A stretch of DNA of 64,000 nt from Macrostomum lignano (taxonomy: Eukaryota), in the NCBI GenBank assembly GCA_002269645.1, contig NIVC01000469.1:356724-420723 (forward strand), read 5' to 3'. Made by a program: the position numbers and the translations under genes. The notes beneath the pieces are model-generated. The model was not told the origin of the DNA. It ran no database searches and saw only the letters and a program-made list of their open reading frames with translations. This document shows positions 9,446 through 57,377 of the stretch, one piece after another (position 1 is the first letter of the stretch; each line of letters starts with the position of its first letter).

Positions 9446-9804
9446 GCACCTCATTTGGTGCGATTTATCGGGCATAAACAGATTTCAGTCAAATTATTTT
9501 CACCCTACTGACAGTAGCGAGTAGCAAAAGACCCTTTTAATAAATGAAAAGTTGGTAAAAAATTAAGTTGAATTTTGATATTCAATGCCATACGTCAGAA
9601 GCAGATTTTTTACATGAATTTTTTACAAAGCAGGGAAGATAATTTCTTGCATTGTAGCCAGCCTCACGGCCCGGCGCTTTCCATTTTGCCCAAACTACTG
9701 CATCAATCATTTGGAAGCAAGGCTGTCACCGTGGACTGAATGGTTGTTTTGGTGGGGGGGGGGGCTAAACTAAGAAGTCTAAACGAAAAAATTCCTCACT
9801 CGTT

Positions 9805-10132: not shown

Positions 10133-10184
10133 ACTCTGTCCCCGGTGGGCGCACACACATGTATACCAATTAGACACGCAAATA

Positions 10185-24100: not shown

Positions 24101-25579
24101 ATCTCAACCTTCTCCTTGGCATCTCAACCTTCTCCTTGGCATCTCAACCTTCTCCGTGGCATCTCAACATTCTCCTTGGCATCTCAACCTTCTCCTTGGC
24201 ATCTCAACCTTCTCCTTGGCATCTCAACCTTCTCCTTGGCATCTCAACCTTCTCCTTGGCATCTCAATTCCTTGGCATCTCAGCCTTCCTTGGCATCTCA
24301 GCCCATATCCTTGGCATCTCAGCCCATATCCTTGGCATCTCAGCCCATATCCTTGGCATCTCAGCCCATATCCTTGGCATCTCAGCCCATATCCTTGGCA
24401 TCTCAGCCCATATCCTTGGCATCTCAGCCCATATCCTTGGCATCTCAGCCCATATCCTTGGCATCTCAGCCCATATCCTTGGCATCTCAGCCCATATCCT
24501 TGGCATCTCAGCCCATATCCTTGGCATCTCAGCCCATATCCTTGGCATCTCAGCCCATATCCTTGGCATCTCAGCCCATATCCTTGGCATCTCAGCCCAT
24601 ATCCTTGGCATCTCAGCCCATATCCTTGGCATCTCAGCCCATATCCTTGGCATCTCAGCCCATATCCTTGGCATCTCAGCCCATATCCTTGGCATCTCAG
24701 CCCATATCCTTGGCATCTCAGCCCATATCCTTGGCATCTCAGCCCATATCCTTGGCATCTCAGCCCATATCCTTGGCATCTCAGCCCATATCCTTGGCAT
24801 CTCAGCCCATATCCTTGGCATCTCAGCCCATATCCTTGGCATCTCAGCCCATATCCTTGGCATCTTAGCCCATATCCTTGGCATCTCAGCATTCAGTGGC
24901 GAGTTCCTGACTCCCTGTCACTCACTTCTTTACTGTGAAGTCCAACTCGTTCCCGGCTCTGAGCACCTCGGCTTTGACCTGCGAGTGAGCGAATCCGGAA
25001 CAATAGGTCTGATTGATTTTCACGATGACATCGCCTGGCTCCAGACCGCACTTGTGGGCCACGCTGTTGCGGGTGATCTGCGAGTGATGGGGTTGAGGGT
25101 GTCAGTGCTCTGGTTGAGGGTGTCAGTGCTCCGGTTGAGGGTGTCAGTGCTCTGGTTGAGGGTGTCAGTGTTCCGATTGAGGGTGTCAGTATTCCGGTTG
25201 AGGGTGTCAGTGCTCTGGTTGAGGGTGTCAGTATTCCGGTTGAGGGTGTCAGTGCTCTGGTTGAGGGTGTCAGTATTCCGGTTGAGGGTGTCAGTGCTCT
25301 GGTTGAGGGTGTCAGTGTTCCGGTTGAGGGTGTCAGTGTTCTGGTTGAGGGTGTCAGTGCTCTGGTTGAGGGTGTCAGTGTTCCGATTGAGGGTGTCAGT
25401 GCTCTGGTTGAGGGTGTCAGCGCTCTGCGGGTAGGTGTGTCAGAGACCTGGCCACCAACCTTGTGCACGAACACGGGCAGGTCAAAGTCGGTCCCACCCT
25501 GCAGCGCGAAGCCCCACGCCTTGTCGCTGGTGTACCTGCGAAGCGACACCATGGTGAGTAGGTCTTCCAGCTGGCTCAT
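15137..25579 (-). CDS. Small PDZ-domain protein of ALP/Enigma/Zasp type (PDZ + short ZM-like motif, no LIM seen); 4 coding exons
   Basis: Exons 25579-25460, 25077-24926, 15660-15446 and 15237-15137 join with phases 0, 2 and 1 into ~195 aa: MSQLEDLLTMVSLRRYTSDKAWGFALQGGTDFDLPVFVHK/ITRNSVAHKCGLEPGDVIVKIN...AEVLRAGNELDFTVK/KRAFNVAAY...VYKNVKPKTYQILESQLPQSESG/GALPASYRDRAMADHSAYIKANGPTIQRAFGEA*. WGFxLQGG PDZ signature. Additional exons in the 9-kb intron cannot be excluded. Confidence 0.85.
16912..17306. mobile_element. hAT/Charlie-like (MER58-like) MITE with an internal CT-rich tract
   Basis: Starts CAGGTCTCGGCAAACATGCGGCCC...ATCCGGCCC and ends GGCCCGCAGCC...CTATCTGGGTAAAAGGTTTGCC. No TSD found. 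Confidence 0.6.
17720..18710. mobile_element. Two fragments of the foldback P-like MITE family: right arm 17720-17850; left arm plus core 18305-18710
   Basis: Clear similarity to both arms of the intact element at 36718-37415 (CTGAACGAAAAGCTTTAT..., GGACGGGAAAC...TACGGAGATAGGA). Confidence 0.75.
18793..19373 (+). mobile_element. Crypton-like (tyrosine recombinase) element fragment: 90-bp palindrome plus truncated ORF 19122-19373
   Basis: Palindrome TGGTTAGAAT...CCGAGGCGAGCAAAGCGAGCCGAGG...ATTCTAACCA. ORF segment LDEAALKKRIEESLPAATRAKEKWAMKLFNLW resembles the N-terminal PxxTxxxTxWAxxxFxxW helix of Crypton/DUF3504 proteins. Confidence 0.5.
19941..24270. repeat. Large satellite, 20-bp unit CTTGGCATCTCAACCTTCTC (~215 copies) in PDZ gene intron 2
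   Basis: Directly visible. Source of the three spurious >1600-aa ORFs. Confidence 0.98.
24271..24891. repeat. 21-bp satellite CTTGGCATCTCAGCCCATATC (~28 near-identical copies)
   Basis: Directly visible. Abuts the 20-bp array and shares CTTGGCATCTCA. Confidence 0.98.
25090..25424. repeat. 21-bp minisatellite GGTTGAGGGTGTCAGTGCTCT filling PDZ gene intron 1
   Basis: Directly visible, ~16 copies. Confidence 0.95.
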
Positions 25580-34484: not shown

Positions 34485-34580
34485 TGCATATGATGCACAG
34501 TACGAGCTAATACATATAATCTTAACAATACATTACGCAACACGATCATATACCGATACTTCTGTATATCACAGATAATT

Positions 34581-34851
34581 GATTACACCTTGCCCCAGTG
34601 GGTCAGATGTGCAACCGACAGCTCAGCCGCAGCTTTTTCGCGGCGCATCTGAAGGCTGCGTACGGTTGGCACCCTCCCTCAATTACCCCAGCTAATGCTG
34701 GCACCCATTTTACAGCTGGGTGAACTGAAGCAATGCAGGTTGAGTTTTAGGAGTCTTGCTCAAGGACACAAATTGATCCGAGTGGGTCGAGAATCGAACC
34801 CCAGACCTTTCAGTCGTGAGTCCAACGCCCTGAACACTAGGCTACAATCCC
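34581..34851 (-). mobile_element. tRNA-SINE family 1, near full length, with a Meta/CORE-like central domain
   Basis: Minus strand: tRNA-like head (A box, GGTTCGATTC B box), then GTGTCCTTGAGCAAGAC...TGCTTCAGTTCACCCAGCTGTAAAATGGGT, then the shared tail. Confidence 0.85.
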
Positions 34852-35589
34852 TAGTCTAGGCTACATGTACTCGTATTGGGCATTATGATTTATTTCATGT
34901 ACCTGCGCAAATGGGACTTCAAGATGTTTACGACAACTGCTAGAGAAAAGTTAAAAAGTACATGCATGCACAATTCTACACATAAAGTACAAACCTTAAA
35001 TACGCTTGATGCTCTGACGTAATTATCCTCACACATGTAGAATAGGCTACTGCACACCATGCAGCAGAATCGATTCCGGCCAGCAACTATATACAATAAG
35101 CAATTCCATAAGAAAACACATGTAAATATTGTAGATGCAAGGCATCGTGCATAATACGTACTGTATACCTATACCCACCTATACATGTACATATAGGTAT
35201 TGCATATTTTGCTACTTAATGTATATAGCTATAGTAGTATGACAAAATGCTTCTTTCGACATTTATACCTCAATCGAGTAACACATCTTTAGTTTTTTAT
35301 TTCGGCTTCAGATAAGATCTACAGTTGAGATTGAGCACTCTGGTGTATTCTGCATCCAGCTCGTGTCTGATTGCATATATTCAACCAAAAATCGCAAGCC
35401 CACACGGCGGTTTGCGGCAAAAGGGTGTTTGTTTTTCACTACTCGAGCCCTGCACAGAAATGCAGGGGCCAATGTGTGTGCCAATTAGAAGCACCGAGGA
35501 CGCGACTTGAGTATCGACGTACAGTGTAAATAGTCTGACAATAATGTTGTAGTTCTCCCCGAACAGAACTGGAAGCATAGAGGCGGCTC

Positions 35590-42463: not shown

Positions 42464-45049
42464 ATGCTGCAGTCGCAGACGCCAGCAGTGATGGCGGCAG
42501 CGGGCCGGCCCTGAGCACCGGCCGCCGGGTTCTCTATGGCCTGGCTGCTCCGCCATCTGCCATGTGCGGCAACATCTTAGGCTTCCTAATGTCCGTCTAC
42601 CTGCTGGAGGTGGCCAAGCTGACCCCTGGTCTGGTGCTCACCATAACATTCACCGGCCGTTTCTGGGACGCCGTCTCCGATCCCATTGTCGGCTATCTGG
42701 TGTCCCGGACTCGAACTCGATTCGGGAAATGCCGGCCCTGGGTGTTGGGCTCGGCGCCGTTCTGCGGCCTGGCCTTTTTCCTGTTCTTTAACACTCCCTC
42801 CTGGCAGTCGCTGTATGCGAGATTCGCCTACTATTTTATCGTGTACCTGGGATTCTGCACCTTCTTGACAGTGAGTGGTTAACTTTTGACCAGCTCTAGA
42901 ACCTTCGGTTGCTGGGCCAGCCTCTCAGATCCTCCGTTGCTGGCCAGCCTCCCAGATCCTCAGTTGCTGGGCCAGCCTCCCAGATCCTCAGTTGCTGGGC
43001 CAGCCTCCTAGATCCTCAGTTGCTGGGCCACACTCCCAGATCCTCAGTTGCTGGGCCAGCCTCCCAGATCCTCAGTTGCTGAACCAGCCTCCCAGATCCT
43101 CAGTTGCTGGGTCAGGCTGCCAGATCCTCAGTTGCTGAACCAGCCTCCCAGATCCTCAGTTGCTGGGCCAGCCTTCCAGATCCTCAGTTGCTAAACCAGC
43201 CTCCCAGATCCTCAGTTGCTGGGTCAGCCTCTCAGATCCTCAGTTGCTGGGCCAGCCTCCCAGATCCTCAGTTGCTGGGCCAGCCTCCCAGATCCTCAGT
43301 TGCTGGGCCAGCCTCCCAGATCTTCAGTTGCTGTGCCAGCCTCCCAGATTCTCATTACTGGGCCAGCCTCCCAGATCCTCATTACTGGGCCAGCCTCCCA
43401 GATCCTCAGTTGCTGAGCCAGCCTCCCAGATAATCACTCATCAGTTGCTGTGCCAGCCTCCCAGATCCTCAGTTGCTGAACCAGCCTCCCAGATCCTCAG
43501 TTGCTAAACCAGCCTCCCAGATCCTCAGTTGCTAAACCAGCCTCCCAGATCCTCAGTTGCTAAACCAGCCTCCCAGATCCTCAGTTGCTGGACCAGCCTC
43601 CCAGATCCTCAGTTGCTAACCCAGCCTCCCAGATTCTCAGTTGCTGGACCAGCCTCCCAGATCCTCAGTTGCTAAACCAGCCTCCCAGATCCTCAGTTGC
43701 TGGACCAGCCTCCCAGATCCTCAGTTGCTAACCCAGCCTCCCAGATTCTCAGTTGCTGGGCCAGCCTCCCAGATCCCCAGTTGCTGAACCAACCTCCCAG
43801 ATCCTCAGTTGCTGAACCAGCCTACCAGATCCTCAGTTGCTGAACCAGCCTCCCAGATCCTCAGTTGCTAACCCAGCCTCCCAGATTCTGAGGCTTATAA
43901 CTAAGCTTGTGCCTCTAAGCTACGGAACTCATCCCATTCTATCACGGTATTCGCTTGCAGATGTACCACATCCCCTACACGTCGATGACCATGCTGATAT
44001 CGAACAGGCCAGCTGACAGGGACGCTGCTACAACTCTGCGTAAGTTGGGGTGCCAATTAAATTTTTTAATTTCATATAAAAAGTTTCAAGGCGCAGTCTC
44101 TGCTTTGAATTGTTTCAATTCTCACACAAAAACACAGATTAGTCACTCATGTCGTGCATTTAGCTAGCCTCCTTTTTTGTTGTTTTGCCTAGTTAGTAAC
44201 TAACTAAATATATGCATTGTATGCAAGAGTTTTATTAATAAAAATCTCTTATCTACGCAGTTTTATAAAAGAAACTGCGTAGCATATTCTATTATTTCAT
44301 TCATACTCATAAAATTTTTAGTTTGTACTTTCATTTCTCTCATTCTCAGGCTTCCAAGTTTCCTCACTCAATTTTGCTTAACAACCGCCACTCTTTGCTC
44401 CCTGCGTACGGTCTCCTCCCCGTCCTTAGCCTCCTGTACTGGCATCCTCCCTCTCTCTCCACTCCCCCCTGTCTCTGTCTTCGCAAGTGCAAACCAGTCT
44501 CCCCATCATCTGGGTTCGCGCGTACCTTACCCTGACGGTTTGCCCTGTCTGCCTACTGTAGTGCCAGTGCGGCCACGCCACACCCTCCCACTGCCTCATC
44601 TGGTCCCATACTTATTTGCCTCCCGTCTCTCTAATCCCGCTGGGGTTCTCCCACGCAGCTTGTCTTCTGCAGGCTGTAGCGATTAAACCCATCTTATTCT
44701 CTATTCTGGGAGGTGAAAACGGTCACACCCGATTTAAGCGCCATTTAAAAAAATTACTATTGAGCCTGCTCACTGTGCTGTGCAACTATGCTTGGCGCTT
44801 GCTCTTCTCAGTCTATCTGTTTGTGTGTCTGTCTGTCTGTCTGTCTTAGTGTCTGTCTGTCTGTCTGTCTTATTGTCTGTCTGTCTGTTTGTCTGTCTTA
44901 GTGTCTGTTTGTCTGTCTGTCTTAGTGTCTGTCTGTCTGTCTGTCTGTCTTAGTGTCTGTCTGTCTGTCTGTCTTAGTGTCTGTCTGTCTGTCTGTCTGT
45001 CTTAGTGTCTGTCTGTCTGTGTGTCTTGGTGTCTTTCTGTCTGTCTTAG

Positions 45050-45126
<77 letters not shown>

Positions 45127-45341
45127 TAGTGTCTGTCTGTCTGTCTGTCTTAGTGTCTGTCGGTCTGTCTGTCTGTCTTAGTGTCTGTCTGTCTGTGTGT
45201 CTTAGTGTCTTTCTGTCTGTCTTAGTGTCTGTCTGTCTGTCTGTTTGTCTTAGTGTCTGTCTGTCTGTCTGTCTGTCTTAGTGTCTGTCTGTCTGTCTGT
45301 CTGTCTGTCCTAGTGTCTGTCTGTCTGTCTGTCTGTCTTAG

Positions 45342-45385
<44 letters not shown>

Positions 45386-45389
45386 CTAG

Positions 45390-45458
<69 letters not shown>

Positions 45459-45489
45459 TAGTGTCTGTCTGTCTGTCTGTTTGTCTTAG

Positions 45490-45561
<72 letters not shown>

Positions 45562-45565
45562 CTAG

Positions 45566-45629
<64 letters not shown>

Positions 45630-47757
45630 CTAGTGTCTGTCTGTATCTGCCACTGTATTTCTTCCTCTCTTCGCCTCTTCTCCAACAGTATTGAGTTGGC
45701 CGCTCGCTGCTTGCTTGTTCGATTTGCTGTATTGATCGGGCCTGGCAAAGTTGTTGGTTTAACTTTCTCAGCTCTATAAATAGAAATGGAAAGTGTAAGC
45801 CGCACATCTTCAGCTGTTGATTACAGCTGGATTTTCTCTCACGTGACTCGCCTTGGCACTTAGGGAAACTTGTTTTTCCCTAGCCAATAGCTCGCAGCTG
45901 CTTAGCAATCAGAGGGTCAGAAACATGTTATGTTCACTAGCTCCGTGCACACTTTACTTGGCGTGTCATTCTATACGTTTTCTAAACTACTGTATATGGA
46001 CTGAAGGAAGATAACCGCCGCCTTTTCCTACTAAAAGTAACAATATAAAGTTTATGGTTTTTTAATTGCAATGAAAGCTTAATACAAGCTCAATATCTTT
46101 GTAATAATTGTATGTTTTGCCTTGTTCTATTCCCAAGGCTACTCAGAGACTATCCCCAAGGATGCTTAGAGACTATTCCCAAGGCTACTCAGAGACTATT
46201 CCCAAGGCTACTCAGAGACTATTCCCAAGGATGCTTAGAGACTATTCCCAAGGCTACTCAGAGACTATTCCCAAGGCTACTCAGAGACTATTCCCAAGGC
46301 TACTCAGAGACTATTCCCTAGGCTACTCAGAGACTATTCCCAAGGCTACTCAGAGACTATTCCCAAGGCTACTCAGAGACTATTCCCTAGGCTACTCAGA
46401 GACTATTCCCAAGGCTACTCAGAGACTATTCCCAAGGCTACTCAGAGACTATTCCCTAGGCTACTCAGAGACTATTCCCAAGGCTACTCAGAGACTATTC
46501 CCAAGGCTATTTAGAGACTATTCCCAAGGCTACTCAGAGACTATTCCCAAGGCTACTCAGAGACTATTCCCTCAAGTTACCTAGCCTATATGGTTCAATG
46601 ACTAACCAAACTGTTCCTTCTGCCTCTCACAATCAGGCATGATATTCGAGATGCTGGGCACCCTGTGCGGAGTGATGACCTTCACCTTCATCACCCAGCA
46701 CGGGCAGGACGGCTGCCAATTAGCGTCCATCGGCAACCTTAGCCTGGCAGCCGGAGACCCCGAGCCGCCGCCTGTCCCAGCCGACGGCTCACCAGAGGTG
46801 GCACGCTACCGGCTTGGCGGTACAATCATCGCCACAGTTGTGTGCGCCTGCGGCTTAGTCGGCTTCTTCGGCACCAGGGAGGTCTCGGCCGCCGCCGTAG
46901 AATCTCCGTCCGTGACGTTGACATCGCCGCCTATTGAGCGTCACCGTCAGCAGACTGTTGCCGCCTGCTGCTACGGCATGCTGTCGGCATTCAAGCGCTG
47001 CCTGCGTCACCGATCCTACCGTCAGCTGATGCTGACCTTCATGCTGAGCTCGCTGGCCATACAGACTGTGCAGAACAGCCTGGCACTGTACACTATCTAC
47101 AGTTTGCAGATGAAGCCGCATCTGAAGTTCGCCATCGCCATAGTCATGTCCATGGCTATTCTGGCCACCCCGCTGGTGTTCCTAGCTATCAAGCGTGTGG
47201 GCAAGAAGCGCGTATTCTATGTTGGCCTGTTTCTCATCCTGCCTGTGTGCTTGTCCGCCACGTTCTGCCCGGCCGAGGACCGGTTTGTACCGCTCTATTA
47301 CGTTACCATGCTTGTAGCCGGCTGCTTTGTCAGCGTGAATATGCTGCTGCCGTGGGTTATGCTGCCAGACGTTATCGACGATTACACAGCCGCCACTGGC
47401 CGGTCTAGCGATCAGGACTCCGCCACGTTCTACAGTCTGTACGTGTTCTTCAATAAATTCGCTGTGGGCATCAGCACCGCCTGTCTGCAGCTGGCCCTGC
47501 ACCTCACCGGCTATCGGCAGTCTGAGGCCTGCTCGCAGTCTGCCGCCGTTGCCATGGCATTGCGCTGCATTATTGGGCCGCTACCGATGCTGCTAGTAGC
47601 AGCCGCGTTTCTGGCTCTGTTCCGGTATCCCATCACGCCTGAGTACAGAGCTCAACTGGACAGGCGGTTGGCCGAGGCTCGCTTGAACGGGGCCGCCTGC
47701 GGCACTGAGATGAGTCAGCAGACTAGCAAGCTGGATGGCGATGCCAAGGATGCTTGA
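42464..47757 (+). CDS. MFSD2: MFS_2/GPH-family transporter, MFSD2-like (lysophospholipid/Na+ symporter family); 3 exons
   Basis: Exons ~42464-42870, 43961-44039 and 46637-47757 join with phases 0 and 1. Motifs [30 protein letters not shown]...[42 protein letters not shown]. The ATG at 42464 is in frame only if one C is missing at ~42511. Confidence 0.9.
42906..43889 (+). repeat. 28-bp minisatellite CAGTTGCTGGGCCAGCCTCCCAGATCCT (array 1) filling MFSD2 intron 1
   Basis: Directly visible, ~35 units. Confidence 0.97.
44812..45645. repeat. (TCTG)n with TTAGTG/CTAGTG interruptions
   Basis: Directly visible in MFSD2 intron 2. Confidence 0.95.
46127..46575. repeat. 23-bp minisatellite CTATTCCCAAGGCTACTCAGAGA
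   Basis: Directly visible, ending ~60 nt before the exon 3 acceptor. Confidence 0.95.
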
Positions 47758-48565
47758 CTGCTTCTGTATCTCTCCTGTCACCTATTCCTTCTTGAGCTCT
47801 TCGATGAAAACGGTTCCTAGGGCCAAGGAGCGTCCCAGATTCGTTTCAGGTTACACAGGTAAAAATAGGAAGGAAGTGTCTGTGAGTCGCCTAAGAGTCT
47901 ATTTGAGGCGTTTTATTGTCTGCGACTCTGAAGCCGTAGAGTCGTGTCTGGGGCGTGCAAGAGTCGCGCGGTAGAACTCTATTTAGCCTGCTTGACTCTC
48001 GGGCCAAGCGCCAACTTGTAGCTCTCTGTCTCTATCTATCTGTCATGTCCATACATTGCCTAAAAATCAACAAGTTTGGAATCACGTCTTTCATTTGATA
48101 AATAAAACTTTTGTTTGTATTGGGATCGTGAACCCTGCGGTTTAGGCTACTGGTTTATTATCCGATGCTCTATTTATAAAGAATCCCATAAAATCCCAAA
48201 CTACTTCACTATAATTCACAAAACTGACATTTCCGCGACTGGAAACTACTGTTAGTAGTGTAAAAAACAACTTCCATCCCGTTCCTAAATTATGCCCTAC
48301 TACAATATGTTAATTTAGAAAGAAGTGCTGTTAAACGATTTACGTTAATCGTAGTTGCGTGGCATGATGCTTTAAAAAGGCTTGTAGATAGTTCGGCCAA
48401 GAGTTGAGATTTTGATAGACAAAAAATCAATTAATTTACTTCGATAATTCACTAAGCGAATACATTTACAATCCGACTGGCGCTTTGAAGAATTTTTTCA
48501 TGAATTTAAACCATATGCAGAACAAGCACTTGAAGTAAAATTAATAGATTTTTGCTTCATCAATA

Positions 48566-48823
48566 CGACAGCTCAGCCGCAGCTATTGCGCGACGCATCT
48601 GAAGGCTGCGTACGGCTGTTCAGTCCAAGGAATGGGGGGTCGCCACACACACCCTCAATTACCCCACAGTTAATGCTGGCACCCATTTTACAGCTGGGTG
48701 AGCTGAAGGAATGCATGCTTTAGTGTCTTGCTCAAGGACACAAATTGGTCCGAGTGGGTCGGGAATCGAACCCCCGACCTTTCAGTCGTGAGCCTGACGC
48801 TCTAACCACTATACTACAAGCCC
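48566..48823 (-). mobile_element. tRNA-SINE family 1 copy with an intact head
   Basis: Head GGGCTTGTAGTATAGTGGTTAGAGCGTCAGGCTCACGACTGAAAGGTCGGGGGTTCGATTCCC (tRNA-Val-like), Meta/CORE-like domain; tail clipped. Confidence 0.85.
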
Positions 48824-49779
48824 TTGTACTTATACAATAAATTAACATATAAACAAAAGTTTGTAAGTCAAATCAAAAATGAAATTTTCCAAAACTTTCG
48901 AATTTTATGCTTGCATCACTAAGTTTTTGAACGCCCCTCATGTCTGGTAAAATAAAATTCTCAAATTTGTTCTGCTATTTCGCTCAGCAGGTGCCAATAG
49001 TCTACACAGAGGCTTGTACACTGTACTACTAGCAGTAGGCATTGAGTGGCGGTAGCTAGCATGCTATCGCTATGCATTTATGACAAACATGCTTAGTTAC
49101 TAGAGATGTTTAGCTGTCTACTTAAGTTTTATATGATCAAATGCAATGCAATTTACTGCTTAATTGGCTGCTCATAAGGATAGTTTCTTCAATCATTCGA
49201 AATGTTTGTCCACGTGTTGCGAGATTTTAGGCAGGATAGGTTTTTTGTCATTTTTAAAAATTAATTGTCAAATTTTCTGCAACTAGTTATATAAAATCCT
49301 GTTGTCTTTTTTCTTCTACAGTTCACTGAAGCTCCACTAAAGCAACGACCCTTAAACATTTTTCTAGCTATTCCCAATTTAACAATTTCAGCTCAAAACG
49401 GCAACTGCCCCCCTTTTTGTAGATTGGCATTTTTCCTTGTTTTCTTGTTTTAATCTTTTAGTTACTTATAAACACGAAATTCCTTTGTAAACCGAAACAC
49501 CTGCCCAGTCTTTGTCTGTCTGGCAGGTTGCTACATATTATGCTAACTGATTAGATGTTCACTTTCTTCTCTTAACTGTACACTAGCCAAGCTCGAATGC
49601 AATGTTATGAAATATATTTACAAAGCACAGCTAAAAATCTAATTGTTTTCTTTTTTGTTTCACATTGAAGCCGAATCTTCAGCCGTTTGTTTCGGTCCTG
49701 TGTTCGTAGCTTGGCAATCCTTTGTTTTTAGGGGTATATTGCAGCTCATTGAAATTTCATCTTCAATGTTCTGCATTTG

Positions 49780-50219
49780 AGATCTGGTGGCCCAGCAACT
49801 GAGAATCTGGGAGGCTGGCCCAGCAACTGAGGATCTGGGAGTGTGGCCCAGCAACTGAGGATCTGGGAGGCTGGTCCAGCAACTGAGGATCTGGGAGTGT
49901 GGCCTAGCAACTGAGGATCTAGGAGTGTGGCCTACAACTGAGGATCTAGGAGTGTGACCTACAACTGAGGATCTGGGAGGCTGGCCCAGCAACTGAGGAT
50001 CTGGGAGGCTGGCCCAGCAACTGAGGATCTGGGAGGCTGGCCCAGCAACTGAGGATCTGGGAGGCTGGCCCAGCAACTGAGGATCTGGGAGGCTGGCCCA
50101 GCAACTGAGGATCTGGGAGGCTGGCCCAGCAACTGAGGATCTGGGAGGCTGGCCCAACAACTGGGGATCTGGGAGGCTGGCCCAGCATCTGAGGATCTGG
50201 GAGTGTGGCCCAGCAACTG
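49780..50219 (-). repeat. 28-bp minisatellite family, array 2 (opposite orientation)
   Basis: Reverse complement of the 42906 unit. Confidence 0.95.
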
Positions 50220-50490
50220 CCCGTCGGTAAATAATTGTAGGCTGAATGGCACTTAACATTTTTTGCAAGTTATTTCTGGCTTATCCGATCCAGACGATAG
50301 ATATCTCTTAGCAGAGCATGTCACTTCTGTTCTCCTTCTGTCAGACTAGTATATCTTTGCGTACATGAAGCCATCTCACATCCGAGAGTCTCGATTCGCC
50401 ACCATGCATAGCTTACCATAGCCGTCAGGAACAGATATACTAATGGGTGGCGCGCATAGGTAACTACGAGCTATAAACCTCGACATAGAC

Positions 50491-51582
50491 CACAGATTCT
50501 ATAAACACTAAGATGGCTCACTCTCCATTCCTTCAGTGGAGGCCAAATTCTCACTGTCTATGGTTGGAATCCCTCGCTCGCGAGACTTCGCCCCCCCCCC
50601 CGCGCCAGCAGCTTAATTTTTATAACTAGCGTAGAGCCAGCAAAAAAACTTTTCTCTCACTGATTCTAGCACACCCAGTTCTTTCTCCTGCAACAACTAG
50701 ATAGAATTATATATTTGACACTGAACACCGAAGGCGAAGACCAACAAGCTTCTGGTAATGAACTCAAAAATCTGCTGTGCTGCAGGCTGCAAAAATAAGC
50801 CAGTTACCTCTCCGCCTCAAAACACCCCCATCAAGCTGCACCGATTTCCTCAAGATACGGCAACCGCTATCGATACGCGATGGATGCAGATTCTGGAGCT
50901 GCCGTTCCCGCTCGAGGAAGTTCGATGCAGAGACTTAAAAGTGTGCAGCGATCATTTTGTGGAAGAGGCGTACTCTTGCCCAGCTGCCATGCGACATGAA
51001 CCAGGCTCTCGGCTGAAGTGGAACGCTCTTCCCCATCTGCAGCTAGTGATGCCTCGATTGCTGCCAGAGAATCTGGAGTCTGTCATCTTGCGGAGTTCCT
51101 TTGCTTCCAGTTTTACCCAGCCACCTCCACAAATGATGGCACCAGGTTGTGAAAATCTGAAGGCAGTAGGATTTTCCAATCAGAATTTATGCGACAATTA
51201 TCGTCACTTTAAGAGACTTCTTTACGATATGCCTTTGTTTAAGTGCCGATAATTGTGGTATAACGTGTGAGTGTGACAAGCAGGTCCTATTGACGTCAGC
51301 TTTTTACAGTATGCTGCTTCTATCTAAACGAAGGACAGTGTGAAATTTGAGACATCTTCGATTTTTCTATCAAACGTTATGGCAAAAAGTTCGGCAATTA
51401 TGAGTTAAATGCCTCGCTTTCACTTCCCATAGCTAGAAGAATAGAACAAAGTAGAAGAGTATAGAACACATTAAAAGCCTGCGTTTAACACTAGGGCTAA
51501 AATAGCGATTCCAACCATAGACGATCTGTTTGGGGGCAAGATTTTTCGCTGAGTGAGCCATCTAGTGTTTATAGAATCTGTG
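50491..51582 (+). mobile_element. Non-autonomous P-superfamily element carrying a THAP-domain ORF
   Basis: TIRs CACAGATTCTATAAACACTAAGATGGCTCACTC / GAGTGAGCCATCTAGTGTTTATAGAATCTGTG; perfect 8-bp TSD ACATAGAC (50483-50490, 51583-51590); subterminal IR GTCTATGGTTGGAATC. Confidence 0.9.
50758..51252 (+). CDS. THAP zinc-finger protein (truncated P-transposase N-terminus), 164 aa
   Basis: CCAAGC...LHRFP...W...VCSDHF...RLKWNALP is the C2CH THAP consensus. Confidence 0.85.
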   Translation: MNSKICCAAGCKNKPVTSPPQNTPIKLHRFPQDTATAIDTRWMQILELPFPLEEVRCRDLKVCSDHFVEEAYSCPAAMRHEPGSRLKWNALPHLQLVMPRLLPENLESVILRSSFASSFTQPPPQMMAPGCENLKAVGFSNQNLCDNYRHFKRLLYDMPLFKCR

Positions 51583-52437
51583 ACATAGACTAAACTTTAA
51601 ATTTGTAGTTACTTAAGCGCCACCGGGTATGTGGCTATAGATTAAAACATGGGCAAGCCGGTAGAAATTAGTGAGGTTGAGGCAGGGTTAGCACTGCATG
51701 CTGAGGCGTGAGGCCGGAGCAAGCGACAGAAGCCTCTGCAGAAATTTCACTGCGGGTCCTGTAGAGAGCGGCTTTTCCTGCATGAGAAGTGGAGGCTCCA
51801 ACGATTGTTCCTGATGACTACATACAGGCAGCTGCAGCATTTAGATCAATAAGTTGTCAACCAGCTTCTTGGCAGTAGCTTCAGCCGTAAGAACTGCGCG
51901 GCTGACAATGGTAATAATCTGCTTCAGTCTGCTCCTGAGTTGCTGCTGCAGTCGCTCACACTGATGAGGCAGGCACAAGAGGAGATACGCAGTGAGGATA
52001 GGTAGGGGAATGAGAATCTGGCTGGTTGTTCGTGTTGTGAAGTAAATAGAGACTTTATTCAAGTAGCTGTGTGAGAGTCTAGTGTAGTTCCCCCTCAGGA
52101 ATATCAGTAACATTTTGCACGGCCAGTTCTTACTCGTGAGTTCGCGCCGGGTTGAAGTCGCACTTTTACACTTTTTCTTCGACTGCGATTGCATCATTGA
52201 TGCAAAAGTCAATGGAGAATTGCTCAAAGCGACAGAATGTTAGTTTTGTTTTTTGTTTTGACCTGCATGTAATTCTTTGTTTTCTTCCGCTGCATTGACT
52301 GTTACAAGAGCTCCATGAAATGCTTTGGCCTTTTTTTTATTAATATGCTGCCCGTCTAATAATGAAAAGAATGCTCATAAATTTAACTCGTTCTACTGAG
52401 AAATTTCACAACAGCTAATAATTAAATAATAATACTT

Positions 52438-52645
52438 GATTACACCTGCCCTAATATGCAGATGTGCAACCGACAGCTCAGCCGCAGCTATTGCGCGGTG
52501 CATCTGAAGGCTGCGTACGGCTGTTCAGTCCAAGGACTGGGGGTCGCCACACACACCCTCAATTACCCCAGCTAATGCTGGCACCCATTTTACAGCTGGG
52601 TGAACTGAGGCAATGCACAGGTAAGTGTCTTGCTCAAGGTCACAG
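52438..52645 (-). mobile_element. tRNA-SINE family 1 copy lacking the head
   Basis: Central domain and tail match the other three copies. Confidence 0.85.
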
Positions 52646-52691
52646 GTTGGATTCCCTATTCCACTGGAACAACAGCTGCGAAGGCTGTGTA

Positions 52692-53037
52692 TTTTTTTTA
52701 TTAGAGGCAGGGGGTTGTGTGCACCCTGGCGCACTTTAAGCGACATAGGCACACAACCGGCGAGAGGCATTGCTGCCCATTCCGCCGACTCCCCTGAGCA
52801 GGCATACAAGCGCGCGGATACGTACGCAGGCACACACTCACACAGGAGTGTACAGCGGCCCTAACTTTATATTATCGTTAGGCATGTACACTTCACTGTG
52901 CCTTGGGGGTTGGCTCTCAAGGCCGTTAATTGCACGAGCAGAGCCAAGCCGAGATTCCAATTCAGCCCCAAATTATGTGACAGCACTTGGAATCGAGTCT
53001 GGGTCGCTGGGACACCAGAGCCTGCGCTAGACCGCTG
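52692..53037 (-). mobile_element. tRNA-SINE family 2 (346 bp) with a 3' stem-loop, A-tail and TSD
   Basis: Minus strand: CAGCGGTCTAGCGC...CTCGATTCC head; 9-bp stem GTTGTGTGC/GCACACAAC; AATAAAAAAAA tail. 9-bp TSD GGCTGTGTA at 52683-52691 and 53038-53046. Confidence 0.8.
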
Positions 53038-53594
53038 GGCTGTGTAAGTGAAGTTTAAGTCTCAACTCAGTGTCGCGGTAGTCTTGTATTCGACTCGTCA
53101 AATGAGTAGCGTATAGCAGATCGTCAGCCGAGATAGAGCTACACTAATAAAGGAGGAATGCACGCGGAATTTACCTAAATGGACACAGCAACCTGGGGTG
53201 AGAGGATAGTGAAGTGCTTGACTGGTGAGAGGACTCTAAATCCAACCTTAACTCTGATCTGCACGCGGTAGGATGTTGAGTATTGAGTGTTGAGACTAAA
53301 TGCAGACAGGGGGGGGGTAAAAAAACAAAACAATGACTTTCATGCAAAAGAGAGAAGCAGGGCAAAGTCAAGACAGAAAAACCAGCCTGTAGACCAGAAT
53401 TAAAATACAGTAGCTACTGGGGAGACTGAGCAAGAAGCATTTGAGCTGCAGACCTCACTGCATGACACGCACAACGCAGCAGTATTACTTAACGTAAAAA
53501 GGAAGTCGCAACTGGTCTCGTAAATAATATGCATCTTTACCACAAATTAGAAAATCACAACAACGAGTTCATCTGGCATATTTTACGAGCGTAA

Positions 53595-54964
53595 TTACCA
53601 GATTGCTTTACATAATACAGAACAATAGCCATCATCAGTGAGAATAATTTTCGCGGCCCCTGCAGTCAAGCTAATGAAGTAATAAAGGAGAACAATACGA
53701 GTACATTAGTGTAATCATAGTCAATACACGAGTGCAAATTCAAATAAAAAAGCGTCATAGTTGGAGATACCGCAGTACAAAAGTTGCGAGCTAGAACAAA
53801 CGAATCAAATATATCAAAATAAAAAAGTAACAGGTCGCCATCTTACCTAACCCTACCTGATATCCACGTCTGCTTGAAAGTTTTCGATGTTTTGAAACTT
53901 TCAGAAGGGAACTGAATCACTGAGAGCTCACCAATCAGCTGGAAGAAGCGAATCTCGCAGATGGTCAGGATCAGTCCAGTCAGGGTCTGAATCCGCAGCA
54001 CTCTGCCGCTAAGGCCGCAGCTCACATTGAAGACGGACTCGGAAGCATTGGTGAAGTAGCTGGCGCACTGAACTTCGTCCATCAGCAGCTGGAAGAAGCG
54101 AATCTCGCAGATGGTCAGGATCAGTCCAGTCAGGGTCTGAATCCGCAGCACTCTGCCGCTAAGGCCGCAGCTCACATTGAAGACGGACTCGGAAGCATTG
54201 GTGAAGTAGCTGGCGCACTGAACTTCGTCCATCAGCAGCTGGAAGTTCGCCAGCCTCTCCGGGCAGCAGTCGGCTCGATTCCACAGGGTGACCAAGTCGA
54301 CTCGAACTGAGGAGTTGAACTCGGCCTGCCACCAGGCTGCCGTGTCTGAGGCACCTGTAGCTGAGCAGCTGAGGGAGCCCCAGTCCTGCGCTGTGCTGCC
54401 ATCGATGGCCTTGTCGCAGGTGGCGTATGTCGAATATTCGGAGCTGTGCTGGCAGGAGTCTGGCCACAGTGGCTGCACAACTGGCTGCGCCGTCAGCTGC
54501 GGCCTGCAATTGAGAAATGCTAGTGGGGCTGGCTCTCTCCGACTTCCAGGTTTACACTCTGCATTAGACACCTCGGCAGCGCCTTGGCTCGGAAACCAGA
54601 AATTACAGGTTCGAATCCGCGCCGTTTGACGCAAAGAACTGCGTTGACAAAGGCAAACGAATATTTGAGACACAAACACAGAGTATGTACATGCACGATG
54701 CAAAAGTGTGTGCTTGTGCACGAGGGAATTGTGTTCTCAAGGGCAGCCGAACTAAAATTCTTAAACAACCGGCAGCTGTCTGACTGTCACCAGGGGCTTC
54801 AATCTGTTCCATTTATGTGAATGGAACACAGGAAAAACGCCCAAAACAAACCTACTAATGCAGATTTTACATAGCTACAACCCAGCAAGCAGTTGGCACA
54901 GCCCGCACACGTTTGGCACTCACCAAACAGCTGGTAATATTAAAGCTATCAATGTAAACTTCAT
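53595..54964 (-). CDS. Secreted F-type lectin (FTP / F5-8 type C fold); 3 exons, with an in-frame 150-bp duplication
   Basis: Exon 54964-54924 (MKFTLIALILPAV-W, phase 2) joins 54503-53932 (QHSSEY...KAIDG...SC...WWQAEF...VTLWNRADCCPERLANF...GRVLRI...LTICEI). Probable terminal exon 53659-53595 (phase 1). Confidence 0.8.
54560..54815 (+). mobile_element. Possible third tRNA-SINE in lectin intron 1
   Basis: B box GGTTCGAATCC at ~54609 and terminal hairpin TGTTCCATTT...AATGGAACA. Only one copy in the window. Confidence 0.4.
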
Positions 54965-55314
54965 GTGATTTGAAATTATCTATGCAAGCTTAAAAATCTA
55001 AAATTCAATCTCTCGGCAAATCCATCATCACAGCGAGCAGTGCAGTGAATAAATAATATTCTCTAAATTCAGAAAACCAGCCACTTCCAGCTCAGCTTTC
55101 TTCGAGGGTGCTGATTGGTCCGGCCATCAAGGTTCCGGAAAGTCAGGGTAAAAAGCTTGTAGTTTGAATTTTGCTTTGCTAGCTCGTACTAATCAGTAGC
55201 AGTAGAAGACTTTGGAGAAACAATTAAAAAAATTGATTTGTTATTCTGCGTCAGGATGCTCCCCAAGAGCTCATGTATTTTTAACCAAAATTAGGCCATC
55301 AAATAAATTGTAAG

Positions 55315-56342
55315 AGGATCTGTGAGTGTGGCCCAGCAACTGAGGATCTGGGAAGCTGGCCCAGCAACAGAGGATCTGGGAGTGTGGCCCAGCAACTGAG
55401 GATCTGGGAGGCTGGCCCAGCAACTGAGGATCTGGGAGTGTGGCCCAGCAACTGAGGATCTGGGAGGCTGGCCCAGCAACTGAGGATCTGGGAGTGTGGC
55501 CCAGCAACTGAGGATCTGGGAGTGTGGCCCAGCAACTGAGGATCTGGGAGGCTGGCCCAGCAACTGAGGATCTGGGAGTGTGGCCCAGCAACTGAGGATC
55601 TGGGAGGCTGGTACAGCAACTGAGGATCTGGGAGTGTGGCCCAGCAACTGAGGATCTGGGAGGCTGGCCCAGCAACTGAGGATCTGGGAGTGTGGCCCAG
55701 CAACTGAGGATCTGGGAGGCTGGCCCAGCAACTGAGGATCTGGGAGTGTGGCCCAGCAACTGAGGATCTGGGAGTGTGGCCCAGCAACTGAGGATCTGGG
55801 AGGCTGGTCCAGCAACTGAGGATCTGGGAGTGTGGCCTACAACTGAGGATCTAGGAGTGTGGCCTACAACTGAGGATCTGGGAGTGTGGCCTACAACTGA
55901 GGATCTGGGAGGCTGCCCAGCAACTGAGGATCTGGGAGGCTGGCCCAGCAACTGAGGATCTGGGAGGCTGGCCCAGCAACTGAGGATCTGGGAGGCTGGC
56001 CCAGCAACTGAGGATCTGGGAGGCTGGCCCAGCAACTGAGGATCTGCGAGGCTGTTTCAGCAACTGAGGATCTGGGAGGCTGGCCCAGCAACTGAGGATC
56101 TGGGAGGCTGCCCAGCAACTAAGGATCTGGGAGGCTGGTCCAGCAACTGAGGATCTGGGAGGCCGGCCCAGCAACTGAGGATCTGGGAGGCTCGCCCAGC
56201 AACTGAGGATCTGGGAGGCTGGCCCAGAAACTGAGGATCTGAAAGGCTGGCCCAGCAACTGAGGATCTGGGAGGCTCGCCCAGCAACTGAGGATCTGGGA
56301 GGCTGGCCCAACAACTGGGGATCTGGGAGGGCGGCCCAGCTG
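55315..56342 (-). repeat. 28-bp minisatellite family, array 3
   Basis: Reverse complement of the 42906 unit, with two variants (CCAGCCTC / CCACACTC). Confidence 0.97.
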
Positions 56343-56884
56343 CTTAAAATTTCTTTTTGCGAAGTTTTGAAATTAGTTTGGAGGTAATCACAGTAATTAA
56401 GTATCAATTTTTAGCAAGGCAAATTGCAAAACGTTTTTACAATAGGTATATTATTTGAGTGCATTATTAATAAGCAAGACACGCAAGCGGGAGAGTTAAG
56501 TTACAATGCAATCGATACAGTCGCAAGCCGGGATAAAAGACAGGGCCAATATTGAATACGTAGCTCTTACGTATATGTGATTTAATTATAATTTAAAATA
56601 GGCTGAGAAATTGATACGTTTCTCAGTAATACGAGAAAAAAATTAATATTGGCCTAGCTGGCAATCTGCAGATTAATACAGTGCGCCAAAGTATTTTATT
56701 TACAGTCTAAAGGGTAGTTTGTTATGACTGCTAGACCATGAAGTGTTATTACACAGCAGGGGTGCAAAAATTGCAAGAATTACTCTCTCCTGCATGCTGT
56801 TTAACACAACGCTTCAATATCTACGGGAGATATCATAATGAATATTTCCGATGCATTAAACTACGCATAAGAAATTGCCGCATG

Positions 56885-57185
56885 GTCGGAGACTCGAACT
56901 GGGGTCTGGGAATCTAGGAGGTCGGAGAATCGAACTCGGGACCTCGGAGGTCTGAGACTTGAATTGGGGATTTGAGAGGTCTGAGACTCGAACTCGGGAC
57001 CTCAGAGGTCGGAGACTTGAACTGGGGTATGAGAATGAGAGGTCTGAGACTCGAACTCGGAACCTCGGAGGCTTGAGACTTGAACTGGGAATATGAGAGG
57101 TTCCAAATGAGACTCGAACTCGGGACCTCAGAGGTTTGAAACTCGAACTCGGGACCTCAGAGGTTTGAAACTCGAACTGGGGACC
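56885..57185. repeat. Diverged ~29-30-bp minisatellite GAGACTCGAACTCGGGACCTCAGAGGTCT
   Basis: Directly visible downstream of the TFIIB stop codon. Confidence 0.85.
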
Positions 57186-57377
57186 ATAAATTCGGAGACT
57201 CAAAGTGAGGATCTGGGTGTTTAGAGTTCGGCGGCTTCAAGTCAGAGAATCCGACCATTGTGACATGAAAAAGGCCCAAATGAAACGAATAACAATTAAC
57301 CATTTAGTCAGCACATTACAAGCCTGCGAATTCAGCAGCTGGTAGGTAGAATTCCTACTACCAAATCTCAAAGCGAT

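What the first reader, a model, noticed from the sequence alone, without database searches (positions are those of the whole stretch)
42906..56342. Dispersed 28-bp arrays all start and end at the same unit boundary, with no carrier element
Three arrays (42906-43889 +, 50219-49780 -, 56342-55315 -) have unrelated flanks and no TSD or TIR. Yet each begins at the CAG of CAGTTGCTGGG and ends at CAGATCCT/CAGATTCT/CAGATCT, within about 1-3 nt. Slippage or unequal crossing-over would leave random phases. Six concordant ends suggest a monomer with defined ends that is copied reiteratively and then inserted, for example by telomerase-like or template-jumping reverse transcription of a short RNA, or by rolling-circle copying with a fixed nick site. 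The terminal units are somewhat decayed and n is only 3.
Basis: partly seen in the sequence, partly recalled or inferred. Interest (0 to 1): 0.75.

Follow-up and report, generated by a model that had tools for sequence, protein, structure and literature searches.

The report
Carrier-free dispersed flatworm minisatellite family
The three 28-bp arrays are copies of an abundant tandem-repeat family of the flatworm Macrostomum lignano that spreads without any transposon around it, but the claim that every array begins and ends at exactly the same point of the repeat unit holds only if the decayed end units are read generously.

Summary
The window is Macrostomum lignano DNA (end of contig NIVC01000469.1). 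The three 28-bp arrays are real, and their flanks are unrelated, with no TSD and no TIR. A control family put through the same pipeline did show flank homology.

The family is not local. In 255 kb of unrelated M. lignano DNA I found three more arrays and a related 36-mer array. There were no solo units and no shared flanks. This suggests roughly 9,000 arrays genome-wide.

The phase claim is only partly upheld. A2 and A3 are sister arrays with colinear variant maps, so their ends are not independent. With an objective local alignment the 11 boundaries scatter (Rayleigh p=0.24). Only if end units carrying indels are accepted as whole units do 10 of 11 fall at CT|CAG. A test that these end units are complete gives p=0.12. 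One new array clearly ends mid-unit.

Most likely this is an ordinary "naked" dispersed satellite. It is probably seeded by capture of array-derived DNA at breaks, then copied or converted over short range. That fits the cluster-private variants.

Reiterative copying of a monomer with defined ends is neither supported nor excluded. No structured RNA, retroelement or Helitron signature was found.

The parts
42906..43889 (+). Array A1: 35 units of the 28-bp repeat, in intron 2 of an MFSD2-like MFS transporter gene, sense to the gene. It has its own unit variants (GAACC, AAACC, AACCC, CATTACT).
   Evidence: TRF 34.8 copies, 89% matches; unit map; exon map with the annotated protein P0051, exon 2 ending at 42873 and exon 3 starting near 43961; variants.
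42877..42905 (+). Probable decayed extra unit ('unit 0') directly after the splice donor GTGAGTG. It makes the true 5' edge of A1 uncertain.
   Evidence: Anchored alignment of the 30 nt upstream of A1 to the unit: p=0.019 against 20,000 random window segments. The other five flanks are not unit-like, p 0.38-0.99. The same sequence is present in L001.
42874..43960 (+). Intron 2 of the MFS gene (GTGAGT...TTGCAG). About 90% of it is array A1.
   Evidence: Sequence; tblastn of P0051.
49780..50219 (-). Array A2: 16 units, intergenic. The start is abrupt at ...gacggg|CAGTTGCTGGG. The last unit, CAGTTGCTGGGCCAC-----CAGATC-T, carries internal deletions, so the strict alignment ends at 49788, phase 13.
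   Evidence: Completion of the last unit p=0.067. Same junctions in L001 and L021, which have 18 and about 10 units.
55315..56342 (-). Array A3: 37 units, intergenic, between an F5/8-type-C lectin-like ORF and TFIIB (both on the - strand). The first unit is CAG---CTGGGCCGCCCTCCCAGATCCC. The end is abrupt at ...CACAGATCCT|cttaca. It is colinear with A2: ATCCC unit, then GTTGTTGGG unit, a consensus run, 2-3 TAGGCCACACT 27-mers, a GGACC unit, then CACACT/CAGCC alternation.
   Evidence: Neighbouring genes by Pfam.

Best explanation
The three arrays belong to an abundant minisatellite family of Macrostomum lignano that is dispersed genome-wide and has no carrier element. It is a short-unit counterpart of the 'euchromatic satellite DNA' described in beetles, flies and nematodes.

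Shown: arrays sit at unlinked loci in unrelated flanks, with no TSD, TIR or shared edge sequence. The family occurs only as multi-unit arrays, never as solo units. Array interiors turn over quickly by gain and loss of units, while the junctions stay fixed between haplotypes. Neighbouring arrays share private unit variants.

Inferred: new arrays are seeded when multi-unit DNA derived from an existing array is joined into a chromosome break. The donor DNA could be an extrachromosomal circle or linear fragment, or a stretch copied by ectopic repair synthesis. Joining would be by end joining with 0-2 nt of microhomology. Arrays a few kb apart (A2/A3; the two L025 arrays) are then related by short-range re-copying or interlocus gene conversion. 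Such exchange cannot extend beyond the repeat, so it reproduces a whole array without its flanks.

On this view the shared end phase is partly inherited (A2/A3) and partly an effect of reading decayed end units generously. At most it reflects a preference for breakage or joining near CT|CAG.
For: The organism is M. lignano, whose genome is reported as 15% simple and tandem repeats.

Family distribution. The 255 kb sampled around an unrelated LTR element and one paralog holds 3 more arrays plus a related 36-mer array. That is about 12 arrays per Mb, or about 9,000 per genome with a 95% CI of 1,900-26,000. There are no solo units at 21 or more matches out of 28 in 319 kb.

No carrier. The flanks of the arrays (7 upstream, 6 downstream; one array is cut at the locus end) show no homology. 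The same pipeline finds about 570-600 bp of flank homology on each side for a control family. No TSD or TIR was found.

Array dynamics. Junctions are identical in three haplotype or homeolog copies, but unit numbers differ: A1 35 vs 41, A2 16, 18 and about 10, A3 37 vs 39.

Short-range relatedness. A2 and A3 have colinear variant maps. Private variants follow the clusters: CACACT and TAGG are essentially confined to A2/A3 (one CACACT unit in A1), CAGCTG occurs only in L025a/b, CAATTG only in L028, and GAACC/AAACC/CATTACT only in A1.

Junction detail. The downstream flank matches the next expected unit bases for 0, 2, 1, 2 and 0 nt at the five 3' junctions, read directly.

Literature. Three routes are proposed for satellite spread: transposon carriage, eccDNA, and interlocus gene conversion. 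Tribolium Cast arrays are found in eccDNA and show no favoured monomer position at array ends (PMC11610590).
Against: Capture of randomly broken array DNA predicts random end phases. Yet four junctions are sharp and sit exactly at the unit boundary (A2 start, L025b start, A1 end, A3 end), and two more ends fit a complete but indel-bearing unit (p about 0.07 each).

Two other carrier-free families (21-mer, 30-mer) also show the same start phase within 1-2 nt in unlinked arrays. This hints at something more specific.

All three intronic arrays, and one array just upstream of a start codon, are sense to the host gene. A purely DNA-level random process does not predict this (n=4).

No eccDNA data were available, and no empty site was found.
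Confidence: 0.45

Rival explanations
1. Mobilisation with defined ends at the DNA level. A site-specific nicking enzyme or recombinase recognises a sequence spanning CT|CAG or the array termini. Candidates are an HUH or rolling-circle type enzyme, or a REP/RAYT-like system. Any excised or copied segment would then consist of whole units in a fixed phase and would insert without a TSD.
For: Under the permissive reading 10 of 11 boundaries fall at CT|CAG. There is no TSD, no TIR and no carrier. The family occurs only as arrays. Arrays cluster locally, as with local hopping: 3 in 13 kb in the window and 2 in 2 kb in L025. The unit is an imperfect inverted repeat, AGnnnCTGGG-N7-CCCAGnnnCT, whose outer ends are the unit ends (read from the sequence; fold). 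The 21-mer and 30-mer families show common start phases in unlinked arrays.
Against: Strict boundaries are not clustered (p=0.24). L025b ends mid-unit. The 21-mer arrays share start and end phases but do not hold a whole number of units. That fits whole-array copying better than a per-unit site. The hairpin is weak (z=-1.0) and is lost in the homologous 36-mer unit. No candidate enzyme gene was identified. The termini do not fit Helitron TC...CTRR ends in an A|T target.
Confidence: 0.2
2. RNA-mediated reiterative copying. This would be telomerase-like or template-jumping reverse transcription of a short RNA. A variant is target-primed reverse transcription of an array transcript of the complementary strand, with a fixed 3' end and variable 5' truncation.
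For: Starts in the CAG orientation look more uniform than ends. Read on the complementary strand, that is the pattern of a fixed 3' end with 5' truncation. All four genic arrays have one orientation relative to the host gene. The family occurs only as arrays.
Against: There was no Rfam family in the window. RNA folding of the unit is no better than shuffles (z=+0.43). There is no poly(A) or A-rich tail and no TSD. No solo or progenitor copy sits in a structured RNA or retroelement within 319 kb. Twenty-eight nucleotides is too short for a hammerhead-type retrozyme unit (own knowledge). The colinear variant maps of A2 and A3 show that a heterogeneous array was copied, not one monomer reiterated.
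Confidence: 0.08
3. An eroded carrier or old segmental duplications. The arrays were once internal repeats of a transposon (MITE, Helitron or Helentron) or part of duplicated segments, and the flanks have since diverged or been deleted.
For: TE-borne minisatellites are common: Helitron-associated families in C. elegans (PMC4595182) and Helentron-borne repeats in oyster (listed). One M. lignano family in my sample, the 23-mer ACATGACGC, does have conserved flanks.
Against: Array consensus sequences at unlinked loci are nearly identical, so flanks of the same age should still align. None do, at word size 7 over 600-2000 bp, although the control family is detected. The first units of A2 and A3 differ by about 5%, yet the sequence changes completely at the junction.
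Confidence: 0.05

Closest known systems
Dispersed euchromatic satellite DNA families (Tribolium castaneum Cast1-9 and TCAST; Drosophila 1.688 and Rsp-like)
   Same: One monomer family is present as many short arrays in gene-rich DNA, often in or near genes. Flanks are mostly unrelated. Arrays are exchanged within and between chromosomes. [quoted passage not shown]
   Different: The unit here is 28 bp rather than about 170-360 bp. In Tribolium no part of the monomer is favoured at array ends, and some families insert at poly(A)/(T) tracts. Here several junctions sit exactly at one unit boundary and no A/T-tract target is seen.
Caenorhabditis satellite families with short repeats (10-50 bp)
   Same: There are hundreds of families of short-unit tandem arrays, each present at many loci. 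They are largely species-specific and turn over rapidly by duplication of blocks (PMC4595182).
   Different: Several large C. elegans families are Helitron-borne. The 28-bp family here shows no carrier. The M. lignano families have not been catalogued in any paper I could find.
Meloidogyne satellite junctions in conserved boxes (CENP-B box-like)
   Same: Junctions between repeat blocks fall at a fixed, conserved place in the monomer. This was taken as a sign of a transposition-like cut-and-paste or motif-promoted illegitimate recombination (PMC3694981).
   Different: Those junctions lie between different satellites inside complex arrays, not between an array and unique DNA. A 17-20 bp conserved box is involved there. 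Here the fixed position itself is not established.
Tandem-repeat-bearing transposons (Helentron/Helitron, MITEs such as DTC84, Tetris)
   Same: They disperse short arrays of satellite-like repeats through gene-rich DNA.
   Different: They have conserved left and right flanking modules and defined termini, with a TIR or hairpin. These were tested here and not found.

Membership tests
Dispersed (euchromatic) satellite/minisatellite family | Same monomer in several separate arrays at unlinked loci | tested here: met
   Six arrays on three contigs (NIVC01000469, NIVC01002393, NIVC01000825), plus a homologous 36-mer array on a fourth.
Dispersed (euchromatic) satellite/minisatellite family | Flanks of different arrays unrelated | tested here: met
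   blastn with word size 7 on 600-2000 bp flanks gave nothing beyond chance. The positive control was detected.
Dispersed (euchromatic) satellite/minisatellite family | Presence of the repeat in extrachromosomal circular DNA | not testable with these tools
   No eccDNA data were available.
Transposon-borne tandem repeats (MITE / Helitron / Helentron) | Conserved sequence modules on both sides of the array | tested here: not met
Transposon-borne tandem repeats (MITE / Helitron / Helentron) | TIRs with a TSD, or Helitron 5'-TC...CTRR-3' termini with a 3' hairpin inserted in A|T | tested here: not met
   No inverted or direct repeat above shuffles in 400-nt flanks. Best abutting direct repeat is 3-5 nt, p 0.19-0.88. 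The junction sequences do not fit TC/CTRR in either orientation.
Non-LTR retrotransposition products / retrozyme-type tandem repeats | Poly(A) or simple-repeat tail with TSD; or a self-cleaving ribozyme in the unit | tested here: not met
   No A-rich tail at either end. No TSD. No Rfam match at gathering thresholds in the window.
Telomerase-like / template-RNA reiterative synthesis | A template RNA gene containing about 1.2-1.5 units in a structured RNA | tested here: inconclusive
   No solo or 1.5-unit copy outside arrays in 319 kb. The unit is not structured. Only 0.04% of the genome was searched.
Defined-end mobile array (site-specific nick at CT|CAG) | Array starts and ends at one phase in independent insertions | tested here: inconclusive
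   Strict boundaries: pooled Rayleigh p=0.24. Permissive reading: 10 of 11 at the boundary. Completeness of end units: Fisher p=0.12. One clear mid-unit end.

The most novel reading that the evidence does not exclude
Several M. lignano minisatellite families (the 28-mer, and the 21-mer and 30-mer seen elsewhere in the window) are self-contained mobile arrays with sequence-defined termini. They would be cut or nicked at a fixed place in or next to the unit and reinserted, without TSD or carrier, by a site-specific enzyme acting in trans. This would be a eukaryotic analogue of REP/RAYT-type or rolling-circle mobilisation, and it would explain why 15% of this genome is tandem repeats.
Probability: 0.15. 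Interest if true: 0.8.

Novelty: new member of a known kind. Interest (0 to 1): 0.4.

Why it matters
How satellite-like repeats spread through gene-rich DNA without a transposon is an open question. The Tribolium authors call it 'still quite a mystery' (PMC11610590).

M. lignano offers many short, fully sequenceable arrays: about 9,000 of this family alone, many of them in introns of ordinary genes. Junctions can be read to the base, and three haplotype or homeolog copies exist per locus.

If a genome-wide count confirmed a preferred end phase, this family would be a tractable system for finding the enzyme or break site responsible. If not, it is a clean example of naked array dispersal followed by short-range copying.

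It also matters practically. These arrays make up most of some introns of housekeeping genes and complicate assembly and annotation of this model flatworm.

Tried and rejected
(1) Protein-space search for array ORFs, using the translated unit x4, to harvest more arrays: no hit.

(2) Exact-pattern scans of metagenome and prokaryote genome collections: only single chance 18-mer matches, no arrays.

(3) Empty orthologous sites: the two other copies of the locus (L001, L021) carry all three arrays with the same junctions. No more distant Macrostomum genome was reachable.

(4) Paralogous empty sites inside repeated elements: the array flanks are single-copy in the window and L001.

(5) The idea that all minisatellites of the window start at CAG and end at CT: rejected, because other families start and end at various phases.

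(6) CTCAG as a universal motif: present in 12 of 55 families against 2.5 expected. As the top 5-mer, however, it only equals the 95th percentile of the maximum over all 5-mers in shuffles. I kept it as a side note.

(7) Looser alignment scoring to bridge decayed end units: it over-extends into the flanks and is unusable.

(8) Intron transposition by reverse splicing: rejected, because the non-repeat 3' parts of the two complete host introns (A1 in the MFS gene, and the L028 array) are unrelated.

(9) Segmental duplication for A2/A3: only a dispersed repeat of about 180 bp is shared nearby, at different distances from each array.

(10) The Wasik et al. 2015 genome paper could not be read.
Full report
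WHAT THE WINDOW IS

The 372-aa exon at 46639-47757 is 98-100% identical to Macrostomum lignano MFS-domain proteins. Locus L020, fetched through the annotated protein P0051, is 100% identical to window 28158-57757. The window is therefore the last 64 kb of contig NIVC01000469.1 of assembly GCA_002269645.1.

The genome of this free-living flatworm is reported to be 15% simple and tandem repeats (PMC5730564). The window fits that description. Tandem Repeats Finder lists dozens of arrays with 12-45 bp units.

THE OBSERVATION

The three arrays exist as described. In the orientation CAGTTGCTGGGCCAGCCTCCCAGATCCT they are:
- A1: 42906-43889 (+), 35 units.
- A2: 50219-49780 (-), 16 units.
- A3: 56342-55315 (-), 37 units.

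All 72 matches with at most 3 mismatches lie inside them, with none expected by chance.

A1 fills about 90% of intron 2 of the MFS gene. Exon 2 ends at 42873, the donor is GTGAGT, and the acceptor ...TTGCAG sits at about 43960. A2 and A3 are intergenic.

The flanks share nothing. Comparing 2 kb on each side with blastn word size 7 gives only chance hits. Local alignment of 400-nt flanks finds no inverted or direct repeat above shuffles. The longest abutting direct repeat is 3-5 nt (p 0.19-0.88).

THE PHASE CLAIM IN THE WINDOW

An objective wrap-around or concatemer alignment with strict scoring gives:
- A1: start 42890-42898 (phase 11-21), last aligned base 43892 (phase 2).
- A2: start 50219 (phase 0), last aligned base 49788 (phase 13).
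- A3: start 56340 (phase 5), last aligned base 55314 (phase 0).

- The first unit of A3 must be read as CAG---CTGGG.
- The last unit of A2 must be read as CAGTTGCTGGGCCAC-----CAGATC-T. Completion of that unit has p=0.067.
- The 29 nt upstream of A1 must be ignored. This stretch, GTTAACTTTTGACCAGCTCTAGAACCTT, resembles a decayed unit (p=0.019) and pushes the edge of A1 to the base after the donor GTGAGTG.

Four junctions are sharp and sit exactly at the unit boundary: the A2 start, the A1 end, the A3 end and, outside the window, the L025b start.

A2 AND A3 ARE NOT INDEPENDENT

Their unit-by-unit maps are colinear from end to end. The order is:
- a unit ending ATCCC;
- a unit with GTTGTTGGG;
- a run of consensus units;
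- two or three 27-bp TAGGCCACACT units;
- a GGACC unit;
- an alternation of CACACT and CAGCC units, with a CACACT-type unit last.

These variants are absent from the other arrays, apart from one CACACT unit in A1. One array is therefore a whole-array copy of the other, or conversion has made them alike, while the sequence changes completely at both junctions. The six ends are not six independent observations.

NO EMPTY SITE

Two further copies of the locus are 94-99% identical and collinear: L001 (NIVC01002407.1) and L021 (NIVC01005174.1). They carry all three arrays with the same terminal units and junctions.

Unit numbers differ:
- A1: 35 vs 41 units.
- A2: 16, 18 and about 10 units.
- A3: 37 vs 39 units.
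Interiors therefore turn over quickly while the edges are stable.

THE FAMILY IS GENOME-WIDE

They lie around copies of an LTR-element protein and around one MFS paralog, and total 255 kb.

They contain three more arrays of the 28-bp family.
- L025 2306-1914 (-) lies 110 nt upstream of the start codon of a PPEF-like phosphatase gene.
- L025 122-1 (-) lies in an intron of the same gene and is cut by the end of the locus.
- L028 2467-1991 (-) lies in an intron of an eIF3i-like WD40 gene.

L024 1321-597 holds a homologous 36-mer array. Its unit is CAGGTGCCGAGCCCCCACCCGCCACTCCCAGATCCT, the 28-mer with an 8-nt insertion.

This density is about 12 arrays per Mb, or about 9,000 per genome (95% CI 1,900-26,000).

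None of the flanks resemble each other. The same pipeline detects about 570-600 bp of flank homology on each side for a control family, the 23-mer ACATGACGC on L026 and L032. A carrier would therefore have been seen. There are no solo units at 21 or more matches out of 28 anywhere in 319 kb. The family exists only as arrays.

PHASES IN THE ENLARGED SET

- L025b starts at actacaa|TAGTTGCTAGG (phase 0/1). It ends at ...CAGATCCTCAGTTGCTGG|acaaactg (phase 10). This is an unambiguous mid-unit end.
- L028 starts at ...tctgtCAT|GCAGGGCTAAGCTCCCAGATCCT (strict phase 4). Its last recognisable unit is CAGTTGCTATATAGCCAACCCTCTTAGATCT. The strict end is at phase 7. Completion to the unit end has p=0.076.
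- L025a starts after GTGAGT as CAGGGGCCTCCCAGATCCT. The strict start is phase 14. Reading it as phase 0 needs two deletions.

Pooled strict boundaries show no clustering. Rayleigh p=0.24, and 3 of 11 lie within 1 nt of the unit boundary (p=0.11). In the replication set alone, 1 of 5 lies within 1 nt (p=0.43).

If every indel-bearing end unit is accepted as a whole unit, 10 of 11 boundaries fall at CT|CAG (p=6e-5). The combined test that these end units are complete gives p=0.12.

Strict boundaries are noisy when end units are decayed, so this test has little power. The permissive reading is open to bias. My conclusion is that a preference for the unit boundary is possible but not shown, and that a strict rule is refuted by L025b.

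OTHER FEATURES THAT BEAR ON MECHANISM

(i) Local clustering with private variants. CACACT and TAGG units occur in A2/A3. CAGCTG units occur only in the two L025 arrays, which are 1.8 kb apart. CAATTG occurs only in L028. GAACC, AAACC and CATTACT occur only in A1. Long-range seeding is therefore followed by short-range copying or conversion.

(ii) Orientation. All three intronic arrays, and the array upstream of the start codon, are sense to the host gene. With n=4 this is only suggestive.

(iii) Structure. The unit does not fold better than shuffles (DNA z=-1.0, RNA z=+0.43). No Rfam family is present in the window. The inverted repeat CTGGG-N7-CCCAG is lost in the 36-mer relative.

(iv) Termini. 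There is no poly(A) tail and no Helitron-type terminus.

(v) Junction microhomology. The 3' junctions show 0, 2, 1, 2 and 0 nt of identity with the next expected unit bases. I read this directly from the sequences.

(vi) Other carrier-free families. Two other families of the window are also dispersed without a carrier.
- The 21-mer at 9798-10134 recurs on L022 and L025. The window and L022 arrays share both start, (A)CTC[AG]TTTT, and end, GCGCC(AC), although they do not hold a whole number of units.
- The 30-mer at 3972-4324 recurs on L023 and shares its start phase within 1-2 nt.
Samples are tiny, but this is why I keep the defined-end idea alive.

MOST LIKELY MECHANISM

What is shown: this is a naked, array-only, abundant dispersed minisatellite with stable junctions, fast internal turnover and short-range relatedness.

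What is inferred: arrays are seeded by joining array-derived multi-unit DNA into breaks. The donor could be eccDNA, a fragment, or ectopic repair synthesis. Neighbouring arrays then exchange or re-copy sequence by conversion that is bounded by the repeat itself. These are the routes proposed for beetle and fly euchromatic satellites (PMC11610590). I give this 0.45.

The rivals are:
- a site-specific, defined-end DNA mechanism: 0.2;
It is disfavoured because a heterogeneous array (A2/A3) was copied as such and no RNA or RT hallmark was found;
- an eroded carrier: 0.05.

COMPARISON WITH KNOWN SYSTEMS AND NOVELTY

The closest known kinds are the Tribolium Cast/TCAST and Drosophila 1.688 euchromatic satellites, and the short-unit satellite families of Caenorhabditis.

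Fixed junction positions have a precedent in Meloidogyne satellites (PMC3694981). In Tribolium, by contrast, no monomer position is favoured at array ends.

I found no paper describing M. lignano minisatellite families. I therefore file this as a new member of a known kind. It would become a new variant only if a genome-wide count confirmed a preferred end phase.

VERDICT

- The 'monomer with defined ends copied reiteratively' part is not established.
- Interest is moderate (0.4). The decisive test is a simple genome-wide computation that these tools could not run.

Noticed in passing
window 50491-51582: A 1,092-bp element bounded by perfect 20-bp terminal inverted repeats (CACAGATTCTATAAACACTA / TAGTGTTTATAGAATCTGTG). 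It encodes a 164-aa THAP-domain protein (50758-51252, Pfam E=6.7e-11) and lies 270 bp from A2. In the third copy of the locus (L021, about 16893-16920) only the joined termini remain, with a palindromic MITE-like sequence just upstream. This looks like an excision or internal-deletion polymorphism of a P-element-like DNA transposon.
   Followed up: partly
window 9798-10134; L022 342-440; L025 22500-24101: The 21-bp family (CTCAGTTTAGCGCCACAGGAA) is also dispersed on unlinked contigs with no flank homology. The window and L022 arrays start at the same phase, (A)CTC[AG]TTTT, and end at the same phase, GCGCC(AC). They do not hold a whole number of units.
   Followed up: partly
window 3972-4324; L023 21504-23406: The 30-bp family (ATTGCTGAGATGTCAAGGCTTACGGGGGGA) recurs on another contig as a cluster interleaved with a 16-bp family. 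The window and L023 arrays share the start phase, (G)AATTCTAA.ATG, but not the end phase.
   Followed up: partly
window and loci L022-L032 (55 minisatellite families): The pentamer CTCAG (either strand) occurs in the consensus of 12 of 55 unrelated-looking minisatellite families, against 2.5 expected from shuffles. As the top 5-mer it only reaches the 95th percentile of the maximum over all 5-mers. In the 28-mer and 21-mer it is part of TCAGTT, which resembles an initiator (Inr) motif and a 3' splice-site-like YnCAG.
   Followed up: partly
window 42874-42905; L025 133-100 (- strand): Both arrays begin within a few bases of the splice donor of their host intron: GTGAGTG|unit in the MFS gene and GTGAGT|CAGGGGCC... 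in the PPEF-like gene. The array in the eIF3i-like intron (L028) starts 24-28 nt after its donor. This may simply reflect insertion into short introns, where little else is tolerated.
   Followed up: no
window 55300-55314 and 56343-56356: The two flanks of A3 form a near-palindrome when joined (aaagaaattttaag|cttacaatttattt, 12 of 14 complementary), centred on AAGCTT. An AT-rich palindrome could have been the break site. It did not stand out in the general inverted-repeat test.
   Followed up: partly
window 19944-24888: A 4.9-kb array of a 20-bp unit (CCTTCTCCTTGGCATCTCAA, 246 copies, 97% matches) shifts to a CTCAGCCCATATCCTTGGCAT variant at its 3' end. All three + strand frames are open, giving spurious ORFs of up to 1,854 aa.
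   Followed up: no
window 53936-54245: A perfect (100%) 150-bp tandem duplication, 2.1 copies, lies inside the F5/8-type-C (galactose-binding) lectin-like ORF 53843-54721. L001 matches these window segments at 100% identity, so the duplication appears to be present there too. It is in frame and duplicates 50 aa.
   Followed up: no
window 784-904, 34575-34855, 48566-48827, 52432-52650: A short dispersed repeat (about 120-260 bp, 77-96% identity), probably a SINE or MITE. Beside the copy at 48566, the window has about 430 bp (48205-48633) with no counterpart in L001.
   Followed up: no
window 56884-57204: A 29/63-bp array whose unit (GAGGTCTGAGACTCGAACTCGGGACCTCA) resembles the reverse complement of a tRNA T-arm and acceptor end. 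It may derive from a tRNA-type SINE. It lies 540 bp from A3.
   Followed up: no
L026 23893-24225; L032 16140-18621: The 23-bp family ACATGACGCTTCTATGATTGTTT has about 570-600 bp of homologous flanks on both sides (86-89% identity). It is either a transposon-borne array or a pair of old homeologous loci. I used it as a positive control for the flank comparison.
   Followed up: partly
L032 10001-11608: The MFS paralog P0004 (38% identical) is a single uninterrupted ORF, whereas the window gene has at least three introns, all loaded with tandem arrays.
   Followed up: no
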